From: Octopus sinensis
Lineage: Eukaryota
Assembly: GCF_006345805.1 (NCBI RefSeq)
Contig: NC_043015.1
Location: 45,880,001 to 45,944,000, forward strand
Reading direction: 5' to 3'
DNA length: 64,000 bases
The translations under genes and the position numbers were made by a program. Positions within the stretch are counted from its first letter, which is position 1, and each line of letters starts with the position of its first letter. This document shows, in pieces, positions 7,479-60,228 of the stretch. The notes beneath the pieces are model-generated. The model did no database searches, was not told where the DNA came from, and was given only the letters and a program-made list of their open reading frames with translations.

Positions 7479-7550
7479 GTCAGATAGTGCTCTCTATTTT
7501 TAACTGTTTTAAAGAAACTTACTTCTCCACACAAAGTGAAAAGCAGCAAG

Positions 7551-33821: not shown

Positions 33822-33948
33822 ATGGGGACTGAAAATAATAAAGAGGATCGGAATTCGCCAGAGTATTTATCACAATTGTTAAAGGATAAAAAACAGTTAC
33901 AGGCGTTTCCGAATGTCTTTGTACACATGGAAAGACTACTCGAAGATG
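33822..33948 (+). CDS. QKI: First coding exon of a Quaking/held-out-wings (STAR/GSG RNA-binding protein) gene, QUA1 dimerisation domain; ends in a phase-1 intron
   Basis: ATG at 33822 reads MGTENNKEDRNSPEYLSQLLKDKKQLQAFPNVFVHMERLLED+G (127 nt = 42 codons + 1), followed by GTAAGT at 33949. It matches QUA1 as I recall it from Drosophila How (DYLAQLLKDRKQLAAFPNVFTHVERLLDEE) and human QKI (PDYLMQLMNDKK...HLERLLDEE). From memory, human QKI exon 1 ends at the same phase-1 position. The ORF track misses it because it is under 60 aa. Exon 2 was not recognised in the window. Confidence 0.92.
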
Positions 33949-33967
33949 GTAAGTACTAACGCATAAT
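33949..33967 (+). promoter_or_regulatory. 5' splice donor followed by a bipartite Quaking response element (NACUAAY + UAAY half-site)
   Basis: GTAAGT 33949-33954, TACTAAC 33954-33960, TAAT 33964-33967. The donor is secure; the QRE function is inferred from motif match only. Confidence 0.6.
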
Positions 33968-34280
33968 CTCTATATCTATATATGTGTATATATATGTATA
34001 TGTATTTGTGTATGTATATATGTATTTGTGTGTGTGTGTGTATTGGTGTAAATTTGTTTGTGTTTTTTTTTGTAATTGACTTATTGGAACTTGGTGCCGA
34101 GTTTTTTTTTTTCTTGGTTTGTTTTTTTTTTCGCTTTAGCGGTTTTTATTTCTTCCTTTGCTCTCTTTTTCTCTTTCTCTCTCTCGCGCGCGCACGCGTG
34201 TGTGTTTTATGAACTATATATACGTGTTGGATTAGTTTCTATGCTCTGAGTTAGCTTGCGTGTGTGTGTGTGTGCTGTAT

Positions 34281-34311
<31 letters not shown>

Positions 34312-34617
34312 CTGTTAGCTTGTGTGTGTGTGTGCGCTGTGTTGGCTTGTGTGTGTGTGTGCTATGTTACAGTTTGTGTGTGTGTGTGCTGTATTAGTTT
34401 GCGTGTGTGCTATGTTAGCATGTGTGTGTATACTGTATTAGCTTGTTTGTGTGTGTGCTGTATTAGTTTGCGTGTGTGCTGTATTACCTTGTGTGTGTGT
34501 GTTCTGTATTAGCTTGCTTGTGTGTGATGTTTGTGTGTGTGTGTTACCTTGTTTGTGCATTTTTAAAAACCTTTGTGTGTATTAGTACTTTAGCTTCTGC
34601 GTGTGTGTGTGTGTGTG

Positions 34618-34654
<37 letters not shown>

Positions 34655-35149
34655 TCTGTCTACACGTATGTATATCATGTAGTAGTATGCCATTTACTTA
34701 CAATACACACACGAGTTTATAACATTTACTGTTAAAATATCGAATCAGAATATTAACTAGCGTGGTGGACTGCGTGTATATAATATACACACACACACAA
34801 GTTCACTATGAATTTTATATAAGTGCAGTATATTTGTGATACACAAATATTTTGTAAGTTTTAGTATTTAGCCCCATGTCTGTCTTAATCGGACAGACCT
34901 GTGATAGAAGTTATTCTGTCCATGTCCATCCTGTCGACTAAGGGATACGTACGTGTTTTATCCGTGTGCGTTTTGGAGAAGATTTGACTGCTATTTCTGG
35001 CAGGTGGAGCTGGAGACCTCCTTCTTTGACCCGCCGTGGTTCAGTGTTTGTGGCTAAACTTAGTGCTTGTTTCATGCTGTCTGACCTGAAATGCCAACAA
35101 ACTTTGGCCCAGATGTTTATTGCCTAAGTGCTCTGAACAATAACGTGTT

Positions 35150-35474
35150 TATATATAGTTGTGTATGTATATATATGTGTTCATATATGTATGTATGTAT
35201 GTATATGTGTTCATATACGTATGTATGTATGTATATATATATATGTGTTTATGTATATATGTGTTTATGTATATATGTGTGTTTATGTATATATGTGTGT
35301 TTATGTATATATGTGTGTTTATGTATATATGTGTGTTTATGTATATATGTGTGTTTATGTATATATATGTGTTTATGTATATATATATGGTGTGTTATTA
35401 GTGTATATATATGATGGTGTTTATATATATATATGGTTTATGTATATATATGTGTTTATGTATATATACATATC

Positions 35475-35519
<45 letters not shown>

Positions 35520-35560
35520 CATATCGATGTATATATATTATATATATATATATACATATC

Positions 35561-35601
<41 letters not shown>

Positions 35602-35602
35602 C

Positions 35603-35639
<37 letters not shown>

Positions 35640-35733
35640 CGATGTTATATATATAATATATATATATATATAATACATATCGATGTATATATATATATAT
35701 ATATATTATATATACATATCGATGTATATATAC

Positions 35734-35764
<31 letters not shown>

Positions 35765-37350
35765 CGATGTATATATATATATTAATATATTCTATATATA
35801 CATATCGATGTATATATATAGTATATATATATATATATATATACATATCGATATATATATATATATATACATATCGATATATATATATATATACATATCG
35901 ATATATACATATATATACATATATATACATATATATACATATATACATATATAGATATATATATATAATATACAATTATACTATATAGATATATATATAT
36001 ATAATACATATATATACATATATAGATATATATATATATATACATATATATACATATTAATAATATAATTATATATAATGATATACATATATAAATATAT
36101 ATACATATAAGATTATATATATATATATACATATATATACATATATAAAGATATATAATATATATAGACATATATAATATATATATATATATACATATAT
36201 ATACATATATAAATATAATATATATAAATATATATACCATAAGAAATATAGATATATATATACATTATATACAACCGATATAACTATATATATATGATAC
36301 ATTATATATCACTATAAATAGATATATATATACATATATATACCTAGATAAATATGATATATATAATATATATATACAGATAAAATAGTATATATATATA
36401 TACATAGAGAGGGTAGTATAATAATATATATATATATATACATATATATACATATCGAATATATATACATATATAAATATATATATATATTACCATATAT
36501 ATACATATATAAATATATATATATATATACATATATATACATAGATAAATAATATATATATAACATATATATACATATAGATACTATGATACAATCTATA
36601 CATATATAAATAGATATCTATATATATATATACTACATATATATACATATATAAATATATATAATATATATATATATATATACATATATACATATATAAA
36701 TATATATATATATATACATATATATACATATATATATATATAATATATATATATATATATCCATACATATATACATATAAATAATATATAATATACATAT
36801 ATATACATATATACATATATAAACATATATAAAATATATATATATATACATATATATACATATATAAATATATATATATATATACATATATAACATATTA
36901 AATATATATATATATATACATATATATACATATATAAATATATATATTATATATACATATATAAATATCTATACATATATATACATATATAATATATATA
37001 TATATATACCATATATATACATATATAAAATATATATATATAATACATATATATACATATTATAAATATATATACTATATAAATATATATCCTATATCTA
37101 CAATATATATACTATATAACTATCTTATATAGATACATATATTAACTATATCTATTCTATACATATATATACATATATAAATATATATATATATACATAT
37201 ATATACATATATAAATATATATATATATACATATATATACATATATAAATATTTATATAATATACATATATATACATATATAAATCTATATTATATAGAT
37301 TATACATATATATACATATATAAATATATATATATATATCCATATATCAT

Positions 37351-37381
<31 letters not shown>

Positions 37382-37730
37382 TATCATATATAAATATACT
37401 ATATATATACATATATATACATATATAAATATATATAATCATACATATCATATATGCATATATATAAATATATATATATGCCTACATATATATGCATATA
37501 TATATGCATACATATATAACACTATATATATACATATATATATAAATATATATATATGCATACATATATATGCATATATATATGCATACATATATACATA
37601 TATATATACATATATATACATATATGCATACATATATATATATGCATATATATATGCATATATATATACATATATAGTGTTCATATATGTATATATAGTT
37701 ATGTTATATATATATTTATATATATATACA
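35150..37730. repeat. ~2.6-kb (TA)n-rich compound microsatellite with derived motifs (ACATATCGATG etc.)
   Basis: Direct inspection. Confidence 0.95.
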
Positions 37731-38570
37731 CAATTGTACAAATATGCCTTCTGTCTATCTCGTGTGTGTGTGTGTATACAAGATTAATTCTTGATTTAAT
37801 GGAATCTCTCAGCTGCCACAGAGGGCAGACGAATATATATATATATATATATACACATACATAAGTGCCTCATATATATATACCTACATATGAGGGCGTG
37901 TTGTGTATATATATATATATATACATACACACACTTCATACTCTTACGTCTAATATACACACACACACACACACACAAAAGAACATAGAAAGTCAAACAT
38001 GGCTATACACAACTTAGCAAGTTGAATTCCTAAGAAATGTTTAATTTCCGCTTTCCCATTATCATTAACAAGGAAAAACCTTGCTGTCTTCTTTAAATTG
38101 TGTAAAAATGTCCTGCCAGAAAATGGTAATAGAGGCCAAATAGATAATATTGAGGTCTTGTGAGAATCTTTTAAGCTTTTTTATTGTGGAACTTCTTAAA
38201 AACATAATTTTGGATCATGGTAAAAACTTTCGGCACAGAATGTTTCTCAACTTTGTTGGCGATGTGTGTATGGTTGTATCTAGATGTATGTATGCATGTG
38301 TGTGTGTGTGTGTGTGTGTACATGTCTGTTTCTTAAATGAATCAGGCTTTATAATCATGGACTTCAGAATCTATATAGTGTATATATACATTATACACAC
38401 CTCGACATATAAGCTATAAGTTGAGTTATGACTAGTATCTCTCTTTCTCTGTATGTGTGTGTATAATATATATACATTTATCTCTCTCTCTATATATATA
38501 TATATATATACACCACACACACACATATATCTCTCTAGATATATATATATACACACACACACACATCTAG

Positions 38571-38608
<38 letters not shown>

Positions 38609-39306
38609 CTATATATATCTCTAGAGATATATATACACACACACATCTATATATAAATATATAGTTCCACGTGCCTGAGGGTGTTTGAGTGTGTATAGAA
38701 ATTTATACACATTTGTGCTAATGCCGTATTTAAGCCTTTGTGCATCCTGTGTCTTCTGTTCATGGCACACACACAACACACACACACAGATACACAAAAG
38801 ACAAAATTCCAACCAAAACTGGCGATCCAACTTATGTGGGACACCTATTCCGAAAGTCTGTGCGTAGATATGAAATCAGTTGGTTAGGGGGAAAAAAGCA
38901 CTCTGATTATATTTATTTGTTAGGCAGTATATATATTTTTTAGTCTAAATTTATTTGTCATAACCAGGAATAATACTGATGAACAATATATATACACACA
39001 GAACTAGCGTGTACATCATTGCTCAACAGTATATTTCTGGTTATGCCAAATAAAGTTGGTCAGAAATACACTGCTTGACAATATATAAATAAAACTGCTC
39101 TGTTTTTCTTCTAAGGTGTTGTAATCTTTTCCTGACCAACGGACAACCGACTTATCTATATATGTGTGTGTGTATTTATGTGTGTGTGTATTTATGTGTG
39201 TGTATATATATATATATATATGTGTGTGTGTATATATTTGTGTGTGTATATGTGTGTGTGTATATATGTGTGTGTGTATATGTGTGTGTATATGTGTGTG
39301 TGTGTA

Positions 39307-39337
<31 letters not shown>

Positions 39338-40689
39338 ATATATGTGTGTGTGTGTGTGTATATGTATGTGTGTATATGTATGTCTGTATATGTATGTGTG
39401 TATATGTATGTGTGTATATGTATGTGTGTATATGTATGTGTGGATATGTATTGTGTGTATATGTATGTGTGTGTATATATGTGTATATATATATATATGT
39501 GTGTGTGTATATATGTGTGTGGTGTGAATCTTGTGTGGTGTGTGTATATGTGTGTGTATGTGTGTGGTGTGTGTGTGTATATGTGTGGTGTGGTGTATGT
39601 GTGTGTGTGTGTGTGGTATATGTGTGGGTGTGTGGTAATATATGTGGTGTATATATATATATATGTTTGTGTGTATGTGGAGTTGTTTGCGTATACAAAA
39701 ACGGTCTTGTGAATGCTGTACAAGTCTAAAGTGAAAACTTTGTTCCTAATTATAAGACAAACCAGTGTCTGGTTTGCTGATATATATATATATATATATA
39801 TATCGCATATACATGCTTGTGTATATACGCGCCACATGTATACACTCGCAAGCCCGCGTGCACATGTATGTATATGCATGCCTATAAGAAACACCAAGTT
39901 TGATTTTTTAAAATTTCTTTGCCATGTGATTATAGGGTGCGGCGGTGTTGTTTAATTAACCCCTAGTTACCCCAGGAGATATGACAAATGGCGTTCCAAC
40001 CGTGGTCCTCACATATTTGTCTCCTTCGTTTTCTTTTCGAAGACTGTCTGGCATGAGGTGTGAGGTTAATTAAACTGCTATTTCTAACAACCAGTACGAA
40101 CATGGTTAGAAAAAGGCTCTCTGAAGAGAGAAAAGGAGGGCCCCTGCCTGCAATCGAGATTCGATCCTCAGTTGGAGGCCATTAAAATTGCGGTTTAAAG
40201 TTTGCTGAAGTTTGCATTTTCTGACGCAAAATATTTAGTCAGAAGTTGTTATCCTCATCTCCATAGATGAGGATAAAATTTTTTTTAAAAAGCCAGCTCT
40301 ACAATTATTGTATGTAAATAAATGGTGCCTTGTAAAGGAATCCGTAAAATTGTGTTGGCAAACATCTCTGCGTCGCATACCTCTATCATATTACATGCAC
40401 ACACATAAGGGTATATATACGTGTGTGTAGTGTTTCAGATATTACACACGCGTGTGTACATTCTCTATCTTACACACACATGCTTGTGTGTAGTGTTATA
40501 TGTGGGTGTGTAATGTGTATGTAGTGTATATACAAAATATATGCGTTTCATAATAGACGTAACTATGTAGATATATGTATATGTAAGTGTATAAAGTATA
40601 GTGTGGTATATATATATATATATGTGTGTACATAAGTATCATATATGTGATATAGATATAGGAAACATTGTATATGTGCGTGTTATGTA

Positions 40690-41665
40690 TTTGTATGTAT
40701 ATATATATATATATATATACATATAAACATATATATATACATATAAACATATATATATACATATAAACATATATATATACATATAAACATATATATATAC
40801 ATATAAACATATATATATACATATAGACATATATATATACATATAGACATATATATATACATATAGACATATATATATACATATAGACATATATATATAC
40901 ATAGACATATATATATACATATAGACATACGCACATACATATAGACATGTATACGCACATACATATAGACATGTATACGCACATACATATAGACATGTAT
41001 ACACACATACATATAGACATGTATACACACATACATATAGACATGTATACACACATACATATAGACATGTATACACACATATAGACATGTATACACACAT
41101 ACATATAGACATGTATACACACATACATATAGATATGTATACACACATACATATAGACATGTATACACACATACATATAGACATGTATACACACATACAT
41201 ATAGACATGTATACACACATACATATAGACATGTATACACACATACATATAGACATGTATACACACATACATATAGACATGTATACACACATACATATAG
41301 ACATGTATACACACATACATATAGACATGTATACACACATACATATAGACATGTATACACACATACATATAGACATGTATACACACATACATATAGGCAT
41401 GTATACACACATACATATAGGCATGTATACACACATACATATAGGCATGTATACACACACATATAGGCATATATACACATACATATAGGCATATATACAC
41501 ATATACATATAGGCATATATACACATATACATATAGGCATATATACACATATACATATAGGCATATACACACATATACATATAGGCATATACACACATAT
41601 ACATATAGGCATATACACACATATACATATAGGCATATACACACACACACACACATACATATAGG

Positions 41666-41703
<38 letters not shown>

Positions 41704-41878
41704 TATAGGCATATACACACACACACACACACACATACATATAGGCATATACACACACACACACACATACATATAGGCATATACACACACACACACACAC
41801 ACATACATATAGGCATATACACACACACACACACACATACATATAGGCATATACACACACACACACACATATACATAG
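40690..41878 (+). repeat. Compound 20-22-bp minisatellite grading along its length (ATATAAACAT > ATAGACATGT > ATAGGCAT)
   Basis: Direct inspection. Confidence 0.92.
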
Positions 41879-41883
41879 GCATT

Positions 41884-41968
41884 TTTGTTTGTCTTAATAA
41901 CTGACGAGGTGCCGGAACAGATTTCTGCCCCGACATCCGAAACTCGGAGTTTTATTATGGCAACCGAA
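41884..41968 (+). ncRNA. Type-I hammerhead ribozyme, sense within presumed QKI intron 1
   Basis: TTAATAA CTGACGA GG TGCCGG aa CAGA tt TCTG cc CCGACA T CC GAAA CT-CGG-AG T T TTATTA. Intact core, G10.1-C11.1 pair, helix I of 6 perfect bp extending to ~15/17, helix III ACT/AGT, GUU site at 41949-41951. Confidence 0.8.
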
Positions 41969-42429
41969 TAATTGTCACATTTTATATTACGGATAAATTC
42001 CTCTATTTTACATAATAACGAGGACTCATTCAATCTTTTGTTTTCATACTATTATTAATATATACACATATATACACATATACATACATAATATATACAT
42101 GTCACACACATATATATGTATATATATATATATAATATATATATATATTATATATATATATATATATATAATGCATGAAATGCTTGGTGTAATATTTGTG
42201 GTATAGATATGAATTATGTACAGGTTTAATGTCTTAGTGAAGAATCTCTGCTTTCACCAAATCAATATTTCCTGAAACAATATTTAAAATTTTCGAATAT
42301 TGTATTTTGGAAGAAATGCCTTAGATTTAGCCATTAGCAAGGAATCTTTTCTAAAAGCTTAAATCTGTGAAATCTTGCTCAACAGTTGTACCTAACTGTA
42401 TCAGGTGTGTATGTATGTATGTATATATA

Positions 42430-42870
42430 TATATACTTGCAACATGTGTATGTGTGTGTGTATATGTATATATATATATATATACTTGCAACATGTGTAT
42501 GTATGTATATATATATATATATATACTTGCAATATGTGTATGCAGATATATAATATATATATATACACATGTTCACTATATATATACTTGCAATATGTGT
42601 ATGCAGATATATAATATATATATACACATGTTCACTATATATATACTTGCAATATGTGTATGCAGATATATAATATATATATACACATGTTCACTATATA
42701 TATACTTGCAATATGTGTATGCAGATATATTATATATATATACACATGTTCACTATATATATACTTGCAATATGTGTATGCAGATATATAATATATATAT
42801 ACACATGTTCACTATATATATACTTGCAACATGTGTATGCAGATGATATATAATATATATATACATATGT
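42430..42870 (+). repeat. ~57-bp minisatellite (ATACTTGCAATATGTGTATGCAGA...CACATGTTCACT), about 6 full copies
   Basis: Direct inspection. Confidence 0.9.
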
Positions 42871-43066
42871 TCACTATGTGTATGTGTGCAATATAGATGT
42901 TGTGCATCTATGTATGTGTAAAATATGAATTTACTTATATAGATACGTTTGTAATGTTATATATATGTATATACATACATACATACATCATACATACATG
43001 CATACACTCACACAGATCGACGCACCCGTCAATTAACACACTTATGTGTGAAATTATATTTAGGTG

Positions 43067-43104
<38 letters not shown>

Positions 43105-43893
43105 TCGTAGTAATATGTATATACGAAATAATTCCGATATATATGTAGCGCTCATAATCAATTCGTTCGTTAAATAACTTCAATTACTCGCGCCTATTCG
43201 AGTGTGTGTCTTCATGAGAACTTCAAAAATTCAGGTGTATAAATTATTATAAATACACATTTTGTATCACATACAAAGTACTACTTGTGTATATTTTTTG
43301 AAATAACCATGAACATCCTTGTGTTTCAAGTTTTATCAACTTCGGTTATTCGTTTTATAATATAAAAAGCTTAATAAACTTTTTGATAATTCAGCAAATG
43401 ATTACGTATGTAGTTTTCAAATTACAGACACATATTCGTCTGTCGGTTAATTTTCTGTTTTGTTTTTTAAATGTCGATTTTATTTATATATATATCGTTT
43501 ATTCATTATCGGAAACTTTTATAGAAGTTTGAAAAAGATTCTTTGTAGATCTTATTTCATTTGGACTTTTTTTCTAAGTTTTCACACATCCCTAAAAGTT
43601 TTAGATATAACTTTAATACAATTTAATCATTATCTAATATATATTTGTGTATTTGGTGTAAAGAAATAACTTTTTTCTATTAAAACTTTCAGTAAATCTC
43701 TGGTTACCACTCGTCCCATCACCTTGTTTGCTCTCATTATCTTTAAGTTTTAGATATAACTTTAATACAATTTAATCATTATCTAATAAAATTTACACAG
43801 ACGTATGAATTGGCATAGTTTCGGTTGTAGTAGAAACTTCGCCATATGAATTTGTATGTGTATATATACATATATATATATAGTGTATGTATG

Positions 43894-43929
<36 letters not shown>

Positions 43930-43970
43930 TGTTAGAAGTATTGGGGGTGATGTACAGATTTAATACATAT

Positions 43971-44110
43971 GAAAGAAAAAAAGGTATTCAGAATGCTGGA
44001 TGGTCGTAAAAATATATATTTATTTATATATCACATTATTTCTTCATGTAATATGTAAATAAATATATATTTTTACAACCATCCAGTATTCTGAAAACCT
44101 TTTTTCTTTT
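43971..44110. repeat. ~55-bp-arm imperfect palindrome
   Basis: aaggtattcagaatgctggatggtcgtaaaaatatatatttattta / taaataaatatatatttttacaaccatccagtattctgaaaacctt. Confidence 0.88.
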
Positions 44111-45746
44111 ATATATATATATAATATATATATAAATCTTACAAAGTTTGCTACACATGAGTGGCAGCCATTTTGAAATTGTTTTCTCTCTCTTTCTACC
44201 TTATTTCTCCTCCTCTCTCTCTGTTCCCCTCCCTCCTGTCTTTCTTTTTCTTGTTCTGTCTTTACCTCTCTCTCTCTCTCTCTCTCTCTTTACCTTATTT
44301 CTCCTCCTCTCTGTTCCCCTCCCTCCTGGCTTACTTTCTTTTTCTTCTGTCTCATCCTCTCTCTATTTCTTCCTTATTTCTTCTCCTCTCTCTCTGTTCC
44401 CTCCCTGTCTTACTTTTTCTTCTGTCTTTACCTCTCTCTCTTTATTCCTCATGTCTGTCTTTTTCTTATTCTGTCTTTACCATCCTTCCCCCCTCTCTCT
44501 CTCTTTACCGATGTATCTTTCTTCTTCCTCCTTCTCCTCCTCCTCCCATCTCTATGTGAACTAAGCGTGATTAACTTGCCTGACAGCATTTTATTTTTCT
44601 TCTTTTACCGTCTAATAAACACTCCTTAAGTTTTTTTGTGTCGGTATGTGAGACTGATTGTTATCCGTGTGTGTGTATAAAATACATATATATATTTATA
44701 TATGTATGTATGGGAAAAGAGGTGTTTCGAAATATATATTTGTGTGTTTGGTGTAAAGAAGCAACTTTTTTTCTTTCTATTATAAAACTTTTAGTAAATC
44801 TCGGGTTGCCATTCGTCCCATCACCTTGTTTGCTCTCATTATCTTTAATCAACTTTAATTAATTTGCCTTCAATGTTTGGAGATTTGCGTCTCTGTTTTC
44901 TCCTTGTAAAATTTATCTTTTTTTTTCTAGGACTATACAGTAATTGTGTATATAATATATATATATATATATATATATTCCACAGGGAGTGTGTCTGTGT
45001 GAAAAAATATGGTGGTATCTGTGTGCATATTTTCAAACACGGACACACTCACTGTTTAATTGTGTGTGTCTTCTTCTTTCAGAAAGAAATATAAAGGCCC
45101 TATTCTTTCCTTATCTTCGTACTTCCTAGCACTTTTTTTCTCAATGCTTTCTTGATATCTTTTATGTATTGCTTTGCTTGCTTGCTCTACTCTGAGACCT
45201 TTCTTTTCTACCCTCTGGTTTCACTATCTTTTATATAAAAACTTTTTTCACACCCTGTCGCTCTCTCTATTACACATTCCGCGGCCTTGCTCGATGAAAT
45301 TCCTCTTGACATTAATAAGAATTCGTAAATCTGTCTCTCCTTTCATTTTATCACGCTTATTTATGCTTTCCGCCGTAACACCAGACCAGCTCTGATCAAA
45401 GAGGTTTCCAATTCTGGCCACCACAGCCTTCTCCTGGCCAGTGCATATTATCAAGGACAATTTTAGCTGTGTACTTTTTATGGATATCTATCTGTTGTCT
45501 CTAACAGGTCGAGCGACCGACCACGAAGATGTTTGTTTTTCTTCGTTAGCACGTCCCAACTCTTCTAATCAAGCCTACGATCCAAAGACATTGAGGCCGT
45601 GACCAGTACCAGTTTCCAACTGGGGTCGATGTAATCGACTTAATCCCTTTGTCTGTCCTTGTTTGTCCCGTCTATGTTTAGCCCCTTGTGGGCAGTAAAG
45701 AAATACATTCTACTTTTAAAGGATGTTAAGTTAAATCAAAGGTTAA

Positions 45747-45814
45747 AAAAATGTGCACATCACCCGTTTTCGGCGGGTAGGGTTACGTCGAAAACGGGTG
45801 GTGTACGTATTCTT
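45747..45814 (+). other. Pre-miRNA-like hairpin
   Basis: GCACATCACCCGTTTTCGGCG-ggtagggtta-CGTCGAAAACGGGTGGTGTAC: 20/21 paired including 2 G-U, plus a basal extension. Confidence 0.45.
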
Positions 45815-47390
45815 TACCCCCACCGTTATATCTTTACAGGTCAAGCAACCAGTCACATAGAAACTCCCTCGCTGGTTCCTCCTTTCCGTCAGTTTATTTA
45901 TTTAATCGAGTTTCTATATATTTTCCGTCTGATTTACCCCGCTCTGTTGTCAAGGAACTCTCTCTCTCTCTCTTTCTCTTTCGTTCGCTCAGTCTATCTA
46001 AAAATAGGAGCGACACAAAACGTTCACTCGTTGCCTAAATACGTTTGTATGGTATATGGTATGGAATGGTATGCATGTGTGTATTCCACAGAACTGACTT
46101 TGCATACAACCTTTCGGGGGTCGATGAAATAAATAAGTACCAGTTGAGTACCAGGTCGATATAATCGACTACACCAACCCCCACTCAAGATTTCAGACCT
46201 TATTCCTATAGAAAATATGTAATACATACATACATGTGTGTGTGTGTGTATGTATATATATATTTACGTGTGTGTGTGGTGTGTATATATATATATATAC
46301 ATATGTGTGTGTGTGTATATAGATATGTGTATATACATGTGTGTATATATACTTTATTTAAAAGTATATTACTCCTGGTATTTGAGTACTCTTTTTTCCA
46401 CTTTTTCACATTTATGTGTTTACTCCGGTATATATATTATATATACACACACACATACATACATACAGAATGGCGGTGCCCCAGCATGGCCACAGCTCGT
46501 GAGCTGAAACTAGATAAAATTAAATAAATATATATACACATATATGTATATATCCACACCACACACATTTCATTCCGGACACTTCTGTTTAGTCTAAGTG
46601 CAATGTGCGTATGTCTGTGTACGAGATAAGCTAAGCCACACTTCCTATCCTATTTCGTCTCTTGTGCACATGTGTGTATATATCTATCTGAGTGTGTGTG
46701 TGTGTCTGCCTATTTGTATCTATGGATTTTTAAAAATATATAGATGCAGGTGAATATATAAAGCTGTTAAAAGAAGCATTGGTCTAACTATTTGTGTTCG
46801 TCTCAACTAGTTTTGTTATATTCAGTGACTATAAAAAAAAAAAAACGCATTTCTTCCTAAACTTTTTTTTCATTCTATTTCATTTACTTATTTTTCTATT
46901 ATCCAACCTTTACTTGTTTCACTTGTTTTTAAATTTTTTTTCTCGTACATTTATTATTCTTCCCCTGTCGCATATTCATTCTTTTCTCTCTCGTTCCTTA
47001 GTTCTTTCTCACAATTGAGAAAAGCCTGACTATCCCACAAAAGACTCGTCTTTAAACTATTTAAATATATATAATCTATTCATCTTGTGTTAGTTGTAGG
47101 TCACTTTACCCACTGTTCCGTTCAGTCGGTCTCTCCCCCGGCTCTCTTACTCTCTTCATGAATAAAAAACTTGTCAAACTTATTTTATTTTATTATATTT
47201 TACTGATTCAACAACTGGAACTTTGGGTGTATTTGAAAGAAAAGAGAGGGAAAGATGCCTTTCTTCTCCGTTTCATTAATTTATTTCATAAATTAGCTGA
47301 ATAAATCAGCAACGGTGTTTGTCTTGCCTATCATGTGAGATAGTTCAAACTTTTCTTCTAGAATTGGGTCGTGAATCGGTTATAGCCTTT

Positions 47391-47935
47391 TAACTAAGCC
47401 ATGGGTAACCTGTATAGTCCACGGGACTTTCTGAATGGCCCGCCTGAACGAAAAATTACTAACTAGCCATGGGTAACCTGTACGGCCCACGGGACTTTCT
47501 GAATGGCACGCCTGATTGAAAACTTATTAACTAGCCTGGGTAACCTGTACGGCCCACGGGACTTTCTGAATGGCTCGCCTGAACGAACAATTATTAACTA
47601 GCCATGGGCAACCTGTACGGCCCACGGGACTTTCTGAATGGTACGCCTGAACGAACAATTATTAACTAGCCATGGGCAACCTGTACGGCCCACGGGACTT
47701 TCTGAATGGCACGCCTGATTGAAAACTTATTAACTAGCCATGGGTAACCTGTACGGCCCACGGGACTTTCTGAATGGCTCGCCTGAACGAAGAATCATTA
47801 ACTAGCCATGGGCAACCTGTACGGCCCACGGGACTTTCTGAATGGCACGCCTGATTGAAAACTTATTAACTAGCCTGGGTAACCTGTACGGCCCACGGGA
47901 CTTTCTGAATGGCAACGCCTGAACGAAAAATTATT
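47391..47935 (-). repeat. 8 x ~68-bp minisatellite; unit resembles a Helitron 3' terminus
   Basis: Minus-strand unit ends ...gtCCCGTGGGCCGTACAGGttacccatggCTAG|T. Confidence 0.8.
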
Positions 47936-48554
47936 CGTTTTTTTATGTATTTTTTTAATATTGCGACCCACTTCTCGAAAAAGTTGCCCCCTTTCAAAAA
48001 GAGAGAGCGAGCAAGCAAGTGGTGTTATCTATAATAAAATAGGTGTGGACAGCCCGTATCTTTACAATATGAAAGCCTTTAGTAAACGACAGCTCCCCGC
48101 TAGCTCCTATTTCGTTTCCTTTGCGAGGTGGGGCAAGCTATTCGGGTGTCATCTATACAACAATCTCCCCTTCATCTTAAAAGTCTGTCCTCATTCATTC
48201 CTGCTGCTTCTCTCTCTCCCTCTCTCGTTTACTTGCTCTCCCTCCTCTCTTTTTACACCCTCGCTTTCTCCTTCCCAATGTAGATATAAATTGTATAGAA
48301 AATACAGGTCACATACATACTTTGCATAGCTGTTATCTAGGTACGATTTGAGATATTCTCTCTTCTCTCTCTCTCAATACTAGACGAAAGAAACTGTTTT
48401 TGTTTTGTTTTTGTATTTGATGTTCTCTCACCGTGCGTGTGCACTTTTCTCGTTTTGTTAAAAGTTTAGCAAGTCACATGTCTTACCTTTTGAAGGGAGT
48501 GTACAATACAGGTGTGTTTATATATTAAATGCATGCACCGTGTAATGTGTGTGT

Positions 48555-48790
48555 TCATATATATATATACTTATTTGTGTGTAATATATATATATATACT
48601 TATTTGTGTGTAATATATATATATATACTTATTTGTGTGTAATATATATATATATACTTATTTGTGTGTAATATATATATATATATACTTATTTGTGTGT
48701 AATATATATATATATATACTTATTTGTGTGTAATATATATATATATATACTTATGTGTGTGTGTAATATATATACACTTATTTGTGTGTG
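48555..48790 (+). repeat. ~32-bp minisatellite ((TA)n CTTATTTGTGTGTAA)
   Basis: About 7 copies. Confidence 0.9.
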
Positions 48791-50059
48791 TAATATATAT
48801 ATGTATATATATTGTAGACTTATGTGTACTCGTGTCCCTTCTAAAAGGACCCGGGACAATACAAATTTTTGTGTAGACGTATAGACATCAAATCAATCCT
48901 GATGGAAGTTACACCAACGACCAAAGACATTCCAACCGTAGCCATCATGTCTTTTTTTTTTCTCTCTCAACCAATTTTTACCACCTTTGATTCCTTTTTT
49001 TTTTACTTACTCAGGTGGGCCCTCGTACCAATTCGATGTAAATTCCTACTATATATTTTTTAAAAATTAAATATAAAGGAAATTGTATTAGAAAAATCAA
49101 AATATTTTGTCTTGCAGAAGCAGTTTATTGCACATAAACTTTAACAATTTTGTATAGACTCCCGATTGAGAACTACTGATTTTAGATTTACACTGTGTTC
49201 CTTAGAGACAAACAGCGTGACTTAGGGGTGATTTACTCGCTATTTACCAACAGGTTGAACAGACAGATAGGAAACAAAAATTGGATCTTTTCGCTTATGT
49301 ACACACACACATGTGCGTGGGGTGGGATATCTTCAATTTTACAAACTTATTGTTATTCCACTTAAAATTACTGTTAGATATTTCATTTAAAGACTTAGCC
49401 AAATTCTAAGATTCCAAGAGCATGTTCATTTGTCTTTAAGTTTTCGGTAAATCTTTTGTATACCGGCTGTTTTATATTTTTTCTTAAACTTTTGATGGGT
49501 TTGGACTTTAAGATCTTTTGCAGAAAGATAACCCGCCATTTTTTTTTTTTTCCTAATTTCCTAATTAAAGAAAAGTAATAATTCATTTTAATTTTTCTGC
49601 GTAATTTATCTACTGACGGTTACAGAGTAGGATTTAACTATCTCTCACACGAGGTTCTCAACGTATTAATTTAACTTGCAAGAAAAGGCTACCAAATTTT
49701 TCACATAAACACTCAATAAATGCTTTTGAACAGGGAAGAAGGACGTGGTCTGAAATAAGTCAAGATGGTTCCTGACTCTTTATCAGGACTTGACCTAAGA
49801 TTAGCAACTATGTAGGTCATCACCTGTCCTTGAATCTTATGATGCAACTGACTAGAGTTAAGCAATCACATTATCTGTAAAAGGATATTAGATAAGTTTA
49901 TATCCTTTCAAAAGTCCATTTTCATTAGGTGAATATGTTTCACCTTTCCTCATATGTGGACGCCGAGGTAAATGTGATTGGAACCACAACTTTTCTTAGA
50001 TCTTAGAGTTTGTTGGAGCCTCTTTGTAGTCACAACCTTTTAGAAGTAGCAGCCAAATC

Positions 50060-50475
50060 GGATCTTTTCGGTTTGACCGGCAGTTTTTTAAAATAATTTC
50101 CACGTAACTAAACACTTTTATACTTCGTATACTGGTAGAATGTGTTTTTTTTTTTAAAACATCTTTTTCTCTTGGCTTTATTGAGAAAATTCTATAAGTT
50201 TGTAAGATATTTGTTGTTTTTTCTTCAATTTCTGCACTTTCAACCAATCAGTGACGTCTATTGAGTTAAAAAGCATTCTGTGCCGTATGAATATGTCCCT
50301 CGTTTAAGAAACGGATTGGGTTTATTTACATTTGTGAAGAAAAAAAGATACCTTACCCCCACTCCTAACCCTAAAACAGATTGAAATGCAATAGATCGAT
50401 ACTAGGGTCATAATTATGGGTGACAATTTCATATGACACCGTTAGAAAAAACTGCCGTTCAAACCGAAAAGATCG
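50060..50475 (+). mobile_element. Same MITE
   Basis: TSD GCCAAATC at 50052-50059 and 50476-50483. Confidence 0.92.
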
Positions 50476-50746
50476 GCCAAATCTCCCTCAAATCAAGCCC
50501 TATTGTCTCGAGTATAAATATTAAAAAGCAATACTTATTGGACTATTAGTGCTGGCATACCTTTTAATAAGTCTGCTCGGTCTTGTTAACTGATAACTAA
50601 TTTGCTATTTTGAGCATTTATACTATGTAATGATACAATGCAGTTTAGACACATGAATGGGTACAGGCACGGTTGTGTGGTTCAGAAGTTTCCCTTGCAG
50701 CCATGGAAGGTGCGATATACATGAAGAATATTTTAAGGATCTTGGG

Positions 50747-50980
50747 AATAGGAAATCCTCTAGCGGTCCCCAGCCGCAAGTATATCCCTGTTGGGAGACA
50801 GTCAAGGTTGATCTGGAACCCAATCTAGGCCCCCATATCTACGGCGTTCGCCGCTGGAATAAGGAGTGGTTGGAGATCGCGCGGTCGTTAGCCTCAAATC
50901 GGCAGGCCTGGTCAGCGTTTGTGAGATATGCAGCATTGAGGATGAATGAAGCCAGCTCAACCCACCCCGGGTGAGTGCTG
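50747..50980 (+). mobile_element. LINE ORF2 C-terminal remnant (RTE/RTEX-like)
   Basis: WETVKVDLEP...WNKEWLEIARSLASNRQAWSAFVR. Confidence 0.7.
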
Positions 50981-51399
50981 TCTCAAGTCTTGCAGCCATA
51001 TAGCTTAGGGATTGGTCCCACCGTGTGGCACTGAGCCTGGCCAGTGCGCTGTAAAGTTGAATTGAATAGATGAAAAGTAAAGACTCCTGTCGCATGTATT
51101 TGATTAATTTTGACTCGCTAATTGCAAACAGTTGTTGTTCATGCTTAGAAAAAAAAAATTATTTGCAATCGTTTGTGGAAACATGTCTGGTCATTGAGCC
51201 GTTTCATGTCCGAAGGACTAGAGGGAAATATTATTTACTAGCTTGAAAAATGTCTGTCAGCAAATGGAAAAGAATTTGACCAAAGAAAATTGTCCTTAAA
51301 CATAGTGGACCATTAAGTGGATAAGCGTCTGTAATTATACATGTATTTGGGTTGGGGGCAAGGTTTAATGGGCCTTTTCTGGGACACTCATTGCAGTCC

Positions 51400-51640
51400 A
51401 TTGTCCGCTTTCGCGGAGTTAAACACTGAAATTTTTCACCTTCTCATATCTTCCTTGGGTCTTTTCTGCTGCCTGTTCATATTTTTCCAAGCATGTTTCT
51501 CTGGCACACTGCATCCGATTCCTCTCACCTTCAATGTTTCTTGCATGCAGAAGATGCTCACTTCTCTTTCCAGCATTTCAAACATCCTCCACATTAAACG
51601 CTTGTGCTTTCCTCCCATGCTTGTGTACAATCCTCCATCA
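51400..51640 (-). mobile_element. LINE apurinic-endonuclease N-terminal remnant
   Basis: EMLEREVSIFCMQETLKVRG resembles the conserved vDIcCiQEtrw motif. Confidence 0.5.
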
Positions 51641-51847
51641 TAGGTTATATTTTTCACTTGGAAGACAATCTAGCTGAGTACCCTTCTCTATTTGCAATTC
51701 ACATAGAGCAACGGTCCTTAACCAGGGCCCTTATGACTCTTGTGAATCCATGTAAGATTTTGCTAAACTTTGTGCAATAAATTGGTTATGCTTCTACAGT
51801 GCATCAAATAAATAAATCTAACAATTTTTTAAATAGAATTCCTAATA

Positions 51848-52220
51848 TCTCTCTCTATATAAACGGCAAAATGTCTGTGTGTGTGTGTGTGTCTCCTTTA
51901 TACAAATCAACAATTTTTCAGTTAGAGGGCTCACACTTTCTATGGTTATTCAAAACCGTCCAAAGGTGGTTGTGCACATCTTTACATTTCCCCAGTCACC
52001 CCGCAAAGCCATTAAAAAATCAATAGAAGTGACTTTTTTGTGAATTTTCTATCCAAAACCCAATCAAAATGCCCAAAACTTGATACACCAATTGAATGCA
52101 AGCTAGCTGTATGTGATTGGTCGGAGATTTGGACAGTACTCGCGTGTATGTGCGCACGCACACAGCTGTATATGCATGCACTAGCACTATAACCAGGCGT
52201 TGCTGGGTCATAGAGCTAGT
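51848..52220 (+). mobile_element. Helitron/Helentron-like non-autonomous element
   Basis: Starts TC...TATATAAACGGCAAAATGTCTG(TG)n and ends GCGTTGCTGGGTCATAGAGCTAGT; no TSD. Confidence 0.5.
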
Positions 52221-53156
52221 TTGATTATAAAAATATAATAGAATTTTTAAAGCATCAATCGAATGGTTATGGGGGTTCACCCGAGCAAAATAGGAATCAA
52301 AGGTCCAAAGGTAAAAAAAAAAATAGTTGAGTATCACTATCTAAAAGCTGGAAATTGTCAGGTGCTTCTAGAATGATGCTAAACATCCAAAATATTTTTT
52401 CCTAGGTACTCTTGTACAAATACAAAGTCCTATCAGCATGCCTCTGATTCCACTTGAATCTCTTATGCACCCGTAGTTTGCTTGCATATGGTACAGCATA
52501 TGCAAGTCCTATGTTCTTTTCTGCAGATCAAGCATAGTCCATTGTTCGATGGCTATGGAGGAGTCCTGTCTTCTTTCTTGCCAGCTGAAACATTTGTCTT
52601 TGCTAGTATTAAAGATATTGATTCGTATGCCCTGTTTCTACGTTCACAATTTCAATTCTTTGACAGATTTTGCTTAGAGAATTAGGTCATTACATGTAGT
52701 TTCTTGTATACAACAGATCATAAGTGCCACTGTCGCGTCTTGGTCAACTGATAGCCAAAACCGGGCTATTTTAATAATCAGAGTAACCTTCATAATTTTA
52801 TTGAATTAGTTGCATATTTTGCCACAAAAGGAAAATGTTACTATCGATCTATTTCATTCAGGGCAGGCACTGCCTACCTTGCTTACCTAAGCCCTTACCT
52901 TGCTTACCTAAGTCCTTGATATTGACTCATCATTATCATTTAATGTCCACTTTTTCTGTCTTGCATGGGTCAGACAGTTTGTTGCAGTAGATTTTCCTAC
53001 AACTGCATGTGCATGTCACCAACCTGCATCTGTTTCTAAGCAAGGCAATATTTCCCCCATGGCCAGACATGTTCACGGAAGACTTGAAATGAGAGCACTG
53101 CTTGTATGGGGGTGATACTCGTTTACAGACAGTACATATCTAAACAAGTGTACATA

Positions 53157-53505
53157 GAAATACATCATCGTTTAATGTTCGTTTTCCATGCTAGCGTGTG
53201 TTGGACGGTTCGACTGGGGTCTGGGAAGCCAGGAGGCTGCGCCAGGCTCCAGTCTGGTCTAGCAGTGTTTCTACAGCTGGATGTCCTTCCTAACGCCAAC
53301 CACTCGGTGAGTGTAGTGGGTGCTTTTTACATGCCACCGGCACAGGGGCCCAGAGGAGGCTGGCAAACGGCCATGATCGGTTAGTGCTTTTTTTACGTGT
53401 CACCGACACAGATGCCAGTCAGGTGTTGCTGGCATTGGCCACGTTCGGATGGTGCTCTTTACGTGCTGCCGGCGCGGGTATCACAGCTACAATTTCCATT
53501 TGATT
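53157..53505 (-). mobile_element. LINE 3'UTR/SINE-like family D
   Basis: Reverse complement of 58140-58465, with internal gtgccggtggcac(g/a)taaaaagcacc repeats. Confidence 0.75.
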
Positions 53506-53634
53506 TCATTTTATGTACATAGAAATACATTTTATATATATACATGCATGAATAGACGAAGGCCAGTTTCTTTGTTTCTGTCTACCACATCCACTTGCAT
53601 GTGTGCTTGAGTATTTATTTTAATATCCATCTTC

Positions 53635-54183
53635 GGATCTTTTCACTTTGACCGGCAGATTTTTAAATAATTTCTATGTAACTGAAAAATATTAAACTTC
53701 GTATACTAGTAGAATGTTATAAAATATCTTTTTCTCTTGGCTTTCTTGAGAAAATTCTGTAGTTTGTAACATATTTGTTAATTTCTTGTATTTCGGCAAT
53801 TTCAACCAATCAATGACGTCTATTGAGGTGAAAACAATATCTGCTGTAACATTTTCTGGCGGCATCATATGAAAATGTCTGTTTTTTTATGAGAAAAAAA
53901 GATACCCTGTGGCCATAAACTGAGGGGTTACTTGTAAACAGAGCTGGATAACAAAACCGTTCCCTCTTTAGTGTCCCCCCCATAATTATGACCCTAGTAT
54001 CGATCTATTGCATTTGATTCTGTTTTAGGGTTAGGGGTGTGGGAAGGGTATCTTTTTTTTTTCTTCAGAAATATAAATAAACCCAATCTGTTTCTTAAAA
54101 ACGAATATATATGTAACAAGAGACATTTTCATATGTTACACAGAAATTATTTTTAAAATCTGCTGGTCAAAGTGAAAAGACCC
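53635..54183. mobile_element. Older, rearranged relative of the same MITE
   Basis: TIR variant GGATCTTTTCACTTTGACCGGCAGATTTT / AATCTGCTGGTCAAAGTGAAAAGACCC; TSD CCATCTTC vs TCATCTTT; internal segments in both orientations. Confidence 0.75.
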
Positions 54184-54783
54184 TCATCTTTTATATTTGT
54201 ATGGGTTGTCCAACATTGTATGTATGTGTGTGTGTGTCCACTGTTCAATATGTCCATCTCTGATTTAAGACAACTGGGTATGATTTGAAATTTGTCTATC
54301 GAAAGATTTAGGTGACCATGTGAACGCTCCCTTGTTTATATAGATATATAGTGTATGTGCACACATGTATCTATTTTTATTGACAATGAAAGCTATTGTG
54401 AGCAATTAAAAAATGTTCTAATTAAAAAAAAAAAGCTACCTTTCTTTACGATGCCATTAGCCATGTGCTTAATGCTCTTGTGACCCATCTGTTTGACATG
54501 CTGTCACGTGTGCGAATTGTTAATGTTTTGTATTAAAGTGTAGAGCTTTTAGGTTTCACAATGGTTTAAAAACTTAGCATTTTGAACAGATTACCATTAT
54601 CTGAATCTGTCATTTTCAATGAGACAACTACACGGAGTATGTGTATTGACCAGAGCTTGTATATTGTATTCTCTGTTGCATAAGACCAATGCAAACACAC
54701 TACATAGGTCAATACTTAAATAGTATATTGACAGTACACTATTTGTTGGCAAATGCATGTTAGATGTTCACCAATTTATCTAG

Positions 54784-54819
<36 letters not shown>

Positions 54820-56992: not shown

Positions 56993-57035
<43 letters not shown>

Positions 57036-57086
57036 TTAATTTTATTTGTTAGAGAATAAAAATTCCGGCATAACAGGGGTTCAAAT

Positions 57087-60224: not shown

Positions 60225-60228
60225 GCAT

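What the first reader, a model, noticed from the sequence alone, without database searches (positions are those of the whole stretch)
41884..41968. Sense-strand hammerhead ribozyme inside the presumed QKI intron 1
It has an intact core, a long helix I (6 perfect bp extending to about 15/17), a bulged but extended helix II, a 3-bp helix III that can fold as a monomer, and a GUU site at 41951. It is on the same strand as QKI, 8 kb into the intron, so it is transcribed whenever QKI is. Established: intronic self-cleaving ribozymes exist in vertebrates (CPEB3 HDV-like; HH9/HH10 hammerheads). Inference: co-transcriptional cleavage could tune QKI output or be tolerated by exon tethering. Caveats: GUU is a slower triplet, and the intron extent is inferred from not finding exon 2.
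Basis: partly seen in the sequence, partly recalled or inferred. Interest (0 to 1): 0.85.

Follow-up and report, generated by a model that had tools for sequence, protein, structure and literature searches.

The report
Hammerhead-like motif in a retroposon copy
The hammerhead-ribozyme-like motif really is there, on the sense strand of the first intron of the octopus QKI gene, but it is one of roughly a thousand decaying copies of a short mobile element, so it is a passenger and not a QKI-specific regulator.

Summary
A relaxed hammerhead descriptor hits the window once, against 0.0033 hits per shuffled window. The motif lies on the sense strand, 8.0 kb into a ~63.6-kb intron 1 of a QKI orthologue.

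The stretch 41868-42052 is a 5'-truncated copy of a dispersed ~0.5-kb non-coding retroposon. The genome holds 355 near-exact 46-mer matches and 1,400-2,500 first-look candidates. The window copy is 94.7% identical to the family consensus; the family mean is 94.0%.

The family has a fixed 3' end followed by a (TA)n or (CA)n tail, variable 5' truncation, and head-to-head inverted partners at 30% of loci. These are hallmarks of Penelope-like elements.

The motif is inherited from the family consensus, and only 24 of 74 sampled copies still keep it. CpG decay hits G8 and G12 about as often as other CpG positions.

No Rfam hammerhead model matches any copy tested. The hammerhead fold is about 7 kcal/mol worse than a competing rod-like hairpin.

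Verdict: an ordinary repeat copy, possibly carrying a relic or atypical retroelement hammerhead. A role in QKI regulation is unsupported.

The parts
41868..42052 (+). 5'-truncated copy (about 185 bp) of a dispersed non-coding retroposon of about 0.5 kb. It is the only copy in the window.
   Evidence: BLAST of a full-length family member (L011) against the window gives one hit, 41868-42052, matching element positions 341-522 at 89%. The genome search gave 40 scored matches at 88-92% identity. The copy is 161/170 identical to the family consensus.
41884..41900 (+). Hammerhead-like helix I, 5' strand
   Evidence: Pairs with 41952-41968. Six perfect pairs lie next to the core and 15/17 pair overall.
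41901..41907 (+). Core box CUGACGA (C3-A9)
   Evidence: Read directly. The descriptor hit starts at 41901. The box is present in the family consensus.
41908..41938 (+). Long irregular helix II: 10 pairs, one bulge, one mismatch and one 2x2 internal loop, capped by an AUUU loop
   Evidence: G41909 is a private A-to-G change and A41916 a private G-to-A change, both relative to the consensus. T41925, at a CpG, also differs from the consensus but is shared with many other copies.
41939..41942 (+). Core box GAAA (G12, A13, A14, A15.1)
   Evidence: Read directly. Present in the family consensus.
41942..41950 (+). Helix III: 3 bp (A-U, C-G, U-A) with loop CGG. The 9-mer ACUCGGAGU is an odd-length palindrome, so two copies could pair with each other.
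   Evidence: Cofolding two copies of the helix III segment gives -14.1 kcal/mol.
41951..41951 (+). U17 of the GUU triplet. Predicted cleavage is between 41951 and 41952.
   Evidence: Read directly. The descriptor hit ends at 41951.
41952..41968 (+). Hammerhead-like helix I, 3' strand
40698..41877 (.). Minisatellite and (AC)n array abutting the truncated 5' end of the repeat copy, with units of 24 and 34-36 bp
   Evidence: Tandem Repeats Finder. The units contain CATATAGGCATATA, which resembles the element's first bases CATAGGCATTTTTG.
42058..42170 (.). (AT)n-rich simple repeat directly after the element's 3' end. This is the family's usual microsatellite tail or target.
   Evidence: The same (TA)n, (CA)n or (ATT)n tails follow the 3' end in other copies.
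33831..33947 (+). Coding part of QKI-like exon 1 (Qua1 region: SPEYLSQLLKDKKQLQAFPNVFVHMERLLED), with a GTAAGT donor at 33948
   Evidence: ORF listing, a match to human QKI residues 6-47, and the sequence itself.
33948..64000 (+). QKI-like intron 1. It runs past the window end to about C19:45977605, for a total of about 63.6 kb.
   Evidence: The next QKI-matching exons lie at C19:45977606, 45988885, 45996239, 46003719/46003898 and 46009314. All are on the + strand and in protein order.

Best explanation
Window 41868-42052 is a 5'-truncated insertion of a short (~0.5 kb), non-coding, high-copy retroposon. The family has about a thousand copies, roughly 6% diverged from their consensus. Its insertion signatures match those described for Penelope-like elements (PLEs).

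The hammerhead-like module was inherited from the family's master sequence. It is most likely a relic or an atypical version of the type I hammerheads carried by PLEs and their non-autonomous derivatives (retrozymes). In that case any cleavage would serve the element's own RNA.

The copy landed by chance in sense orientation in QKI intron 1 and sits there as a passenger.

Shown:
- repeat membership;
- inheritance of the motif from the consensus;
- neutral-looking decay of the motif among copies;
- intron and strand position.

Inferred:
- retrotransposition by a PLE-type machinery;
- hammerhead ancestry of the motif;
- little or no cleavage at this locus.
For: Repeat membership:
- 40 scored matches at 88-92% identity on many scaffolds, from 2,464 first-look candidates.
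- 355 matches to a 46-mer with <=3 mismatches, against 0 for the reversed control.
- The window copy is 94.7% identical to the consensus; the family mean is 94.0%.

Retroposon and PLE-like signatures:
- The 3' end is fixed (...GTTGTCATAC(T/C)ATTACTATTAATATAT) and is followed by (TA)n, (CA)n or (ATT)n.
- 5' truncation points vary.
- 20 of 67 loci have a head-to-head inverted partner.
- PMC8557442 describes the same three features for PLEs: 5' truncation, an adjacent inverted 5'-truncated copy, and microsatellite targets. It places their hammerheads in the pseudo-LTR.
- PLE endonuclease is abundant in this genome: at least 4,846 GIY-YIG candidates, some in open frames of 600-880 aa.

The motif is a family property:
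- The consensus passes the hammerhead descriptor.
- It has the full core, G10.1-C11.1, C15.2-G16.2 and GUU.

Decay:
- Only 24 of 74 copies still pass the descriptor.
- G8 is lost in 19% of copies and G12 in 17% through CpG transitions, against 25% at non-core CpG positions.
- Non-CpG core positions mismatch at 3.1%, against 5.8% for neighbouring positions.

Weak activity at this locus:
- The hammerhead fold is -15.4 kcal/mol against an MFE of -22.7, and the hammerhead-compatible fraction of the ensemble is about 6e-6.
- There is only one copy in the window, so no partner in cis for a dimeric hammerhead.
Against: - No Rfam hammerhead model detects the window copy or 15 other copies.
- The genome-wide RF00163 search returned only canonical PLE-type hammerheads of unrelated sequence.
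- Helix II is far longer and more irregular than in described type I hammerheads.
- The 3' ends of the one PLE family I could sample share no sequence with this element, so no autonomous partner is identified.
- Truncation points and inverted junctions show no hotspot at the predicted cleavage site, consensus 73/74. Processing at that site has therefore left no visible trace.
- The descriptor's chance rate extrapolates to roughly 100 sites per genome. A coincidental motif that was then amplified by transposition cannot be excluded.
Confidence: 0.55

Rival explanations
1. This is the same passenger repeat copy, but the hammerhead likeness is coincidental. The family's master sequence contains a long imperfect hairpin with a GC-rich tip. 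The CUGANGA and GAAA boxes fell in the right places by chance, and transposition then multiplied them. No copy has ever been a ribozyme.
For: - No Rfam hammerhead hit on any copy tested.
- The MFE of both the window copy and the consensus is a rod-like hairpin that pairs CUGA with UCGG. It is about 7 kcal/mol better than the hammerhead fold.
- Helix II is atypical.
- The descriptor's chance rate scales to roughly 100 sites per genome.
- Core positions are barely better conserved than their neighbours.
- No 5'-end hotspot at the predicted cleavage site.
Against: - All 11 invariant core bases are present together, along with G10.1-C11.1, C15.2-G16.2, an NUH site and a 6-bp helix I.
- The chance rate for a single ~500-bp consensus is only about 3e-5, scaled.
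- The carrier shows the insertion hallmarks of PLEs, the class that carries type I hammerheads in animals.
- The helix III segment is palindromic, as in dimer-acting hammerheads.
Confidence: 0.33
2. One reading: this copy is an active, co-opted ribozyme that cleaves QKI pre-mRNA co-transcriptionally and tunes QKI output.
For: - The motif is intact in this copy, which is true of only about a third of copies.
- It is on the sense strand within intron 1.
- A private A-to-G change at 41909 turns the second helix II position into a G-C pair.
Against: - It is an ordinary family member at typical divergence, 94.7% against a family mean of 94.0%.
- There is no sign of selection on the motif among copies.
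- The fold is predicted to be disfavoured, helix III is weak and the triplet is GUU.
- The private change only moves the bulge and leaves the number of pairs unchanged.
- A 2026 preprint (10.64898/2026.07.22.740005) reports that vertebrate hammerhead retrozymes are excluded from introns. By inference, an active sense-strand copy in an essential gene would be selected against, not kept.
Confidence: 0.04
3. The element is a foldback or MITE-type DNA transposon. The long inverted repeats are its termini, and the hammerhead-like segment is merely part of the arm.
For: 30% of loci show two arms in inverted orientation, separated by 0-35 bp.
Against: - Most copies are solo, single-arm units.
- The two arms are unequal. 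One always reaches the fixed 3' end. The other stops at internal TA-rich sites, consensus positions ~113-139, next to a (TA)n tract.
- 5' truncation points vary while the 3' end is constant and carries a simple-repeat tail. This pattern fits target-primed reverse transcription with a second priming event, not cut-and-paste transposition.
Confidence: 0.05

Closest known systems
Type I hammerheads of Penelope-like elements and animal non-LTR retrozymes (PMC8557442; PMC7229834; preprint 10.64898/2026.07.22.740005)
   Same: - A hammerhead core with open helix I (type I topology) inside a short, AT-rich, non-coding, high-copy retroelement.
- A short helix III whose segment is palindromic and so could support dimers.
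- Insertions with 5' truncation, adjacent inverted partial copies and microsatellite targets.
- Molluscan genomes are known carriers.
   Different: - Helix II is 31 nt long, with a bulge next to the closing pair. Described forms are compact, and this genome's own canonical PLE hammerheads (GUACCUGAAGAGACCCAGAAUGGGUCGAAACAUGUGUCGUAC) are unrelated in sequence.
- No Rfam hammerhead model matches.
- Copies are dispersed single units, not the head-to-tail arrays that define retrozymes.
- No sequence link to an autonomous PLE was found.
Sm-alpha SINE-like hammerhead elements of Schistosoma (from my own knowledge: Ferbeyre et al. 1998)
   Same: A dispersed, short, non-autonomous retroposon in which each copy carries one type I hammerhead.
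   Different: Sm-alpha has a tRNA-like pol III head and a canonical, experimentally active hammerhead that Rfam's Hammerhead_1 model recognises. Here no tRNA, 5S or 7SL head was detected in a full-length copy, and activity is untested.
   Same: Sense-strand location within a long intron of a protein-coding gene.
   Different: Those are single-copy and conserved at orthologous positions across amniotes or mammals. This is one of about a thousand recent repeat copies. It has no match to RF02275 or RF02277, and orthology could not be tested.

Membership tests
Hammerhead ribozyme (type I) | Invariant core: C3 U4 G5 A6 N7 G8 A9 ... G12 A13 A14, with an A15.1-U16.1 pair | tested here: met
   CUGACGA at 41901-41907, GAAA at 41939-41942, and A41942-U41950. 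Also present in the family consensus.
Hammerhead ribozyme (type I) | Three helices around the core, with G10.1-C11.1 closing helix II and an NUH cleavage triplet | tested here: met
   Helix I has 6 perfect bp and 15/17 overall. Helix II is closed by G41908-C41938 but is bulged and 31 nt long. Helix III has 3 bp. The triplet is GUU.
Hammerhead ribozyme (type I) | Recognition by curated covariance models (Rfam RF00163, RF00008, RF02275, RF02276, RF02277) | tested here: not met
   No hammerhead match at gathering score on the window. None at E<=10 on 41600-42300. None among the 150 best matches on 15 other family copies. The genome-wide RF00163 search returned 7 hits, none from this family.
Hammerhead ribozyme (type I) | The hammerhead secondary structure is the favoured, or a near-favoured, fold | tested here: not met
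   The hammerhead structure is -15.4 kcal/mol against an MFE of -22.7. The hammerhead-compatible share of the ensemble is about 6e-6. The consensus behaves the same way. The nearest-neighbour model ignores tertiary contacts.
Hammerhead ribozyme (type I) | Tertiary contact between helix I and helix II, and site-specific self-cleavage | not testable with these tools
   This needs in vitro transcription and cleavage assays, or mapping of RNA ends.
Hammerhead ribozyme (type I) | Covariation or selective conservation supporting the structure | tested here: inconclusive
   Six double changes were seen, all explicable by paired CpG decay. One-sided changes keep pairing in 98 of 173 cases against 66 expected, but shared subfamily markers inflate this figure. 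The non-CpG mismatch rate is 3.1% in the core against 5.8% outside it. Copies are only about 6% diverged, so the test has little power.
Penelope-like-element-derived non-autonomous retroposon | Variable 5' truncation with a fixed 3' end | tested here: met
   Alignments of 20 and then 30 copies. First covered consensus positions are spread from 1 to 93.
Penelope-like-element-derived non-autonomous retroposon | An inverted 5'-truncated copy directly adjacent on the 5' side | tested here: met
   20 of 67 loci have head-to-head pairs with gaps of -5 to 35 bp. The feature is described for PLEs in PMC8557442. The inverted arm here also lacks the last 30-55 nt of the element, a detail not described there.
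Penelope-like-element-derived non-autonomous retroposon | Insertion bias for microsatellites such as (TA)n | tested here: met
   (TA)n, (CA)n or (ATT)n directly follow the 3' end and flank the inverted arms.
Penelope-like-element-derived non-autonomous retroposon | Sequence shared with the pseudo-LTR or 3' end of an autonomous PLE in the same genome | tested here: inconclusive
   PLE endonuclease is abundant in the genome. The two PLE 3' ends I could fetch, both from one family, share only TA repeats with the element.
Animal non-LTR retrozyme | Head-to-tail tandem arrays of monomers, each with one hammerhead | tested here: not met
   Copies are dispersed singly or as inverted pairs. The one close same-strand pair examined lies inside a local duplication of ~720 bp at a spacing of ~1.1 kb.
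Conserved intronic ribozyme (HH9/HH10-like) | A single-copy locus conserved at the orthologous intron position | tested here: not met
   The single-copy condition fails. Orthologous conservation could not be tested because no other cephalopod genome is available to these tools.
SINE with a pol III head | A 5' region derived from tRNA, 5S or 7SL RNA | tested here: not met
   cmscan at E<=10 on a full-length copy (L011 1000-1720) gave no tRNA, 5S or 7SL match.

The most novel reading that the evidence does not exclude
The octopus repeat family encodes a previously undescribed, active type I hammerhead variant with a long, bulged helix II. Intact sense-strand intronic copies such as this one would cleave host pre-mRNAs, here QKI, co-transcriptionally and measurably lower or shape their output.
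Probability: 0.04. Interest if true: 0.6.

Novelty: new member of a known kind. Interest (0 to 1): 0.2.

Why it matters
As it stands, this matters little. Hammerhead motifs carried by short retroelements are already known to be common in invertebrate genomes, and this copy behaves like any other member of its family.

Two points have modest value. If the family consensus cleaves, it would add an unusual long-helix-II hammerhead that current covariance models miss. It would also add a dispersed (non-tandem), apparently PLE-mobilised carrier in cephalopods.

The case is also a useful caution for genome scans. A perfect-looking ribozyme core inside an intron has to be checked for repeat membership before it is read as gene regulation.

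Tried and rejected
1. Rfam scans: gathering score on the whole window; E<=10 on 41600-42300; E<=10 on a full-length copy; and E<=10 on 15 other copies. None gave a hammerhead or a small-RNA head. They returned only low-complexity microRNA-model noise.

2. My first alignment of copies suggested a ~350-bp perfect palindrome, that is, a MITE. This was largely an artefact of mixing loci in both orientations. After orienting them, most copies are single units and only about 30% have a true inverted partner.

The two PLE 3' ends I did fetch showed no similarity to the element.

4. Looking for similarity to this genome's canonical PLE hammerhead loci (L021-L027): none was found, apart from an incidental copy of the element in L023.

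5. Covariation: the copies are too similar for a meaningful test.

6. Tandem arrangement: the one close same-strand pair checked lies in a local segmental duplication, not a retrozyme array.

7. Literature: full-text searches for 'hammerhead ribozyme' with octopus, cephalopod or retrozyme found no description of this family. An O. vulgaris repeat annotation paper does not mention hammerheads.

8. Orthology in other cephalopods could not be tested with the collections available.

Full report
**1. The observation**

- Helix I pairs 41884-41900 with 41952-41968. The six pairs next to the core are perfect and 15 of 17 positions pair.
- CUGACGA lies at 41901-41907.
- Helix II spans 41908-41938. It is closed by G41908-C41938 and G41909-C41937, followed by a bulged U, a C.A mismatch and a 2x2 internal loop.
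- GAAA lies at 41939-41942.
- Helix III has 3 bp (A41942-U41950, C41943-G41949, U41944-A41948) with loop CGG.
- U17 is at 41951.

A relaxed type I descriptor that I wrote requires the following:
- CUGANGA;
- a closed helix II of at least 4 bp, allowing one bulge and one mismatch;
- GAAA;
- a helix III of at least 3 bp starting with A-U;
- an H17 residue;
- a helix I of at least 5 bp.

It hits the window once, at this site. It hit once in 300 dinucleotide-preserving shuffles, or 0.0033 per window. Within a single window the motif is therefore not chance. Scaled to the 2.72-Gb genome, the same rate predicts on the order of 100 chance sites. That extrapolation rests on one event.

Rfam finds no hammerhead here, either at gathering scores or at E<=10 on 41600-42300.

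**2. Gene context**

The window is G000:C19:45880001-45944000. An ORF at 33816-33959 encodes ...SPEYLSQLLKDKKQLQAFPNVFVHMERLLEDG.

The genome search with that protein places the matches as follows:
- residues 6-47 at C19:45913831-45913947, which is window 33831-33947;
- residues 47-99 at C19:45977606;
- residues 95-134 at 45988885;
- residues 134-184 at 45996239;
- residues 182-214 at 46003719 and 46003898;
- residues 215-305 at 46009314.

All matches are on the + strand and in protein order. A GTAAGT donor follows at 33948. Intron 1 therefore runs from window 33948 to about 33.6 kb beyond the window end, roughly 63.6 kb in all. The motif lies 8.0 kb into it on the sense strand.

**3. It is a repeat copy**

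- Searching the genome with 41878-42050 gave 2,464 first-look candidates. All 40 scored full-length matches were 88-92% identical and lay on many scaffolds.
- A 77-nt consensus of the non-hammerhead 3' part gave 1,405 candidates, with 40 scored at 97-100%.
- A 46-mer pattern with up to 3 mismatches occurs 355 times, against 0 for the reversed control.
- The family therefore has on the order of a thousand copies.
- A BLAST of a full-length member finds one copy in the window, at 41868-42052.

**4. What the family looks like**

After orienting the copies, the element shows these features.
- The 3' end is fixed: ...CTCATTCATTCTTTTGTTGTCATAC(T/C)ATTACTATTAATATAT.
- That end runs directly into (TA)n, (CA)n or (ATT)n.
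- Full-length copies extend about 330 nt upstream of the motif.
- Many copies are 5'-truncated at scattered points.
- 20 of 67 loci carry a head-to-head inverted partner.
- The outer end of the inverted partner stops at internal TA-rich sites, next to a (TA)n tract.

No tRNA, 5S or 7SL head was detected in a full-length copy, and there are no ORFs.

Craig et al. (PMC8557442) describe the same three features for Penelope-like elements: 5' truncation, an adjacent inverted 5'-truncated copy, and microsatellite targets. They also place PLE hammerheads in the pseudo-LTR. This genome holds at least 4,846 GIY-YIG candidates, some in open frames of 600-880 aa. The PLE machinery is therefore abundant here.

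I infer a PLE-mobilised, SINE-like element, but I could not identify its partner. The one PLE 3' end I could fetch is unrelated.

A recent O. vulgaris repeat annotation equates a Jukes-Cantor distance of 0.065 with about 18 My and reports a SINE/LINE burst at that distance (PMC13282606). The family's 6% mean divergence from its consensus falls in that range. The comparison is loose, because the species of this assembly is not given. From memory, the assembly statistics match Octopus sinensis.

**5. The motif belongs to the family, not to QKI**

The consensus reads UUGUCUUAAUAA-CUGACGA-GAUGCCGGAGCAGAUUUCCGCCCCGACAUCC-GAAA-CUCGGAGU-U-UUAUUAUGG. It passes the descriptor.

The window copy is 161/170 (94.7%) identical to the consensus; the family mean is 94.0%. 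Within the motif it differs from the consensus at three helix II positions:
- G41909, a private A-to-G change;
- A41916, a private G-to-A change;
- T41925, a CpG transition shared with many other copies.

The change at 41909 only shifts which nucleotide is bulged. It does not add pairs.

Of 74 sampled copies covering the motif, 24 still pass the descriptor. Among the others, 19 have lost the 5' box and 16 the GAAA box; a copy can fail more than one criterion.

Decay follows the usual CpG pattern:
- G8 is lost in 19% of copies and G12 in 17%.
- Non-core CpG positions are lost in 25%.
- Non-CpG core positions mismatch at 3.1%, against 5.8% for neighbouring positions. This is a small difference, largely expected because the core is A/U-rich.

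Pair statistics give no convincing covariation.

**6. Is the family motif a real hammerhead?**

For:
- All invariant core bases are present.
- G10.1-C11.1, C15.2-G16.2, an NUH site and a 6-bp helix I are also present.
- The helix III segment ACUCGGAGU is palindromic. This could form an extended intermolecular helix III, as in dimer-acting hammerheads (background in PMC7229834).
- The carrier belongs to the class of elements known to hold type I hammerheads in animals.

Against:
- No covariance model recognises any copy.
- The genome-wide RF00163 search returned only compact canonical PLE hammerheads of unrelated sequence.
- Helix II is 31 nt long and bulged next to the core.
- The predicted MFE, for both the window copy and the consensus, is a rod-like hairpin in which CUGA pairs with UCGG. 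It is about 7 kcal/mol below the hammerhead fold.
- Neither truncation points nor inverted junctions cluster at the predicted cleavage site.

I put hammerhead ancestry at somewhat better than even, and coincidence at about one in three.

**7. Mechanism at this locus**

The copy is transcribed as part of QKI intron 1 whenever the gene is. This follows from its position and is an inference.

Several features argue for little or no cleavage here:
- the GUU triplet, which is cleaved more slowly than GUC (from my own knowledge of the NUH rule);
- a helix III of 3 bp with a 3-nt loop;
- no second copy in cis with which to form a dimer;
- a strongly competing hairpin.

A preprint reports that vertebrate hammerhead retrozymes are excluded from introns. 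That fits the idea that active sense-strand copies are selected against. By inference, a copy that has sat in an essential gene long enough to diverge about 5% from its consensus is probably harmless.

**8. Verdict**

The element is an ordinary member of a roughly thousand-copy retroposon family. The QKI-regulation reading is unsupported.

The residual interest lies in a possibly new, model-evading hammerhead variant carried by a dispersed PLE-like element in octopus. One cleavage assay on the consensus would settle that.

Noticed in passing
window 4260-7622 (+): A cluster of five same-strand tRNA genes. Four are tRNA-Gly(UCC), at 4260, 5179, 5607 and 7551. One is called tRNA-Ala(UGC), at 6905; it looks like a diverged copy of the Gly gene. 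Rfam reported four of the five, and ARAGORN added the one at 5607.
   Followed up: partly
window 32990-33260 versus 33722-33990 (+): The QKI exon 1 region, including the start codon, coding sequence and GTAAGT donor, is duplicated in tandem about 733 bp upstream at 97% column identity. Within the coding part the upstream copy differs only by three one-base deletions, which break the frame. This could be a very recent duplication or an assembly or indel-error artefact.
   Followed up: partly
window 40698-41877: A 1.2-kb minisatellite with 24-bp and 34-36-bp units, interleaved with (AC)n, abuts the truncated 5' end of the repeat copy. Its unit contains CATATAGGCATATA, which resembles the element's first bases (CATAGGCATTTTTG). 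The array may have been seeded at the insertion junction.
   Followed up: no
G000:C7755:818867-819512, C10215:93316-93934, C8845:97972-98621, C9497:397220-398017, C9308:6377-6861: There are intron-less QKI-like stretches on small scaffolds. Consecutive parts of the protein lie within a few hundred bases, most with in-frame stops. They look like processed pseudogenes or retrocopies of QKI.
   Followed up: no
L006, L009, L063, L075, L050, L016 and other loci: In head-to-head pairs of the repeat, both arms often end within a few bases of the same consensus position, about 10 nt upstream of my consensus start, where they form a short palindromic junction (TGCTATGA...TCATAGCA). The window copy begins at about the same point. 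This suggests a preferred RNA 5' end or a template-switch point at the base of the long hairpin.
   Followed up: partly
L021, L024-L027 (G000:C13:29988995, C5:30250304, C4:156829443, C16:25146363, C16:25146794): These are canonical minimal PLE-type hammerheads (GUACCUGAAGAGACCCAGAAUGGGUCGAAACAUGUGUCGUAC) that score above the Rfam RF00163 threshold. They show that conventional hammerhead-bearing PLEs coexist in this genome with the atypical family studied here.
   Followed up: partly
L071 (G000:C10:50576285-50578323): A local duplication of about 720 bp at 96% identity, with a spacing of about 1.1 kb, carries one copy of the repeat in each unit. I could not tell whether it is a segmental duplication or a pseudo-LTR-like partial tandem.
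   Followed up: partly
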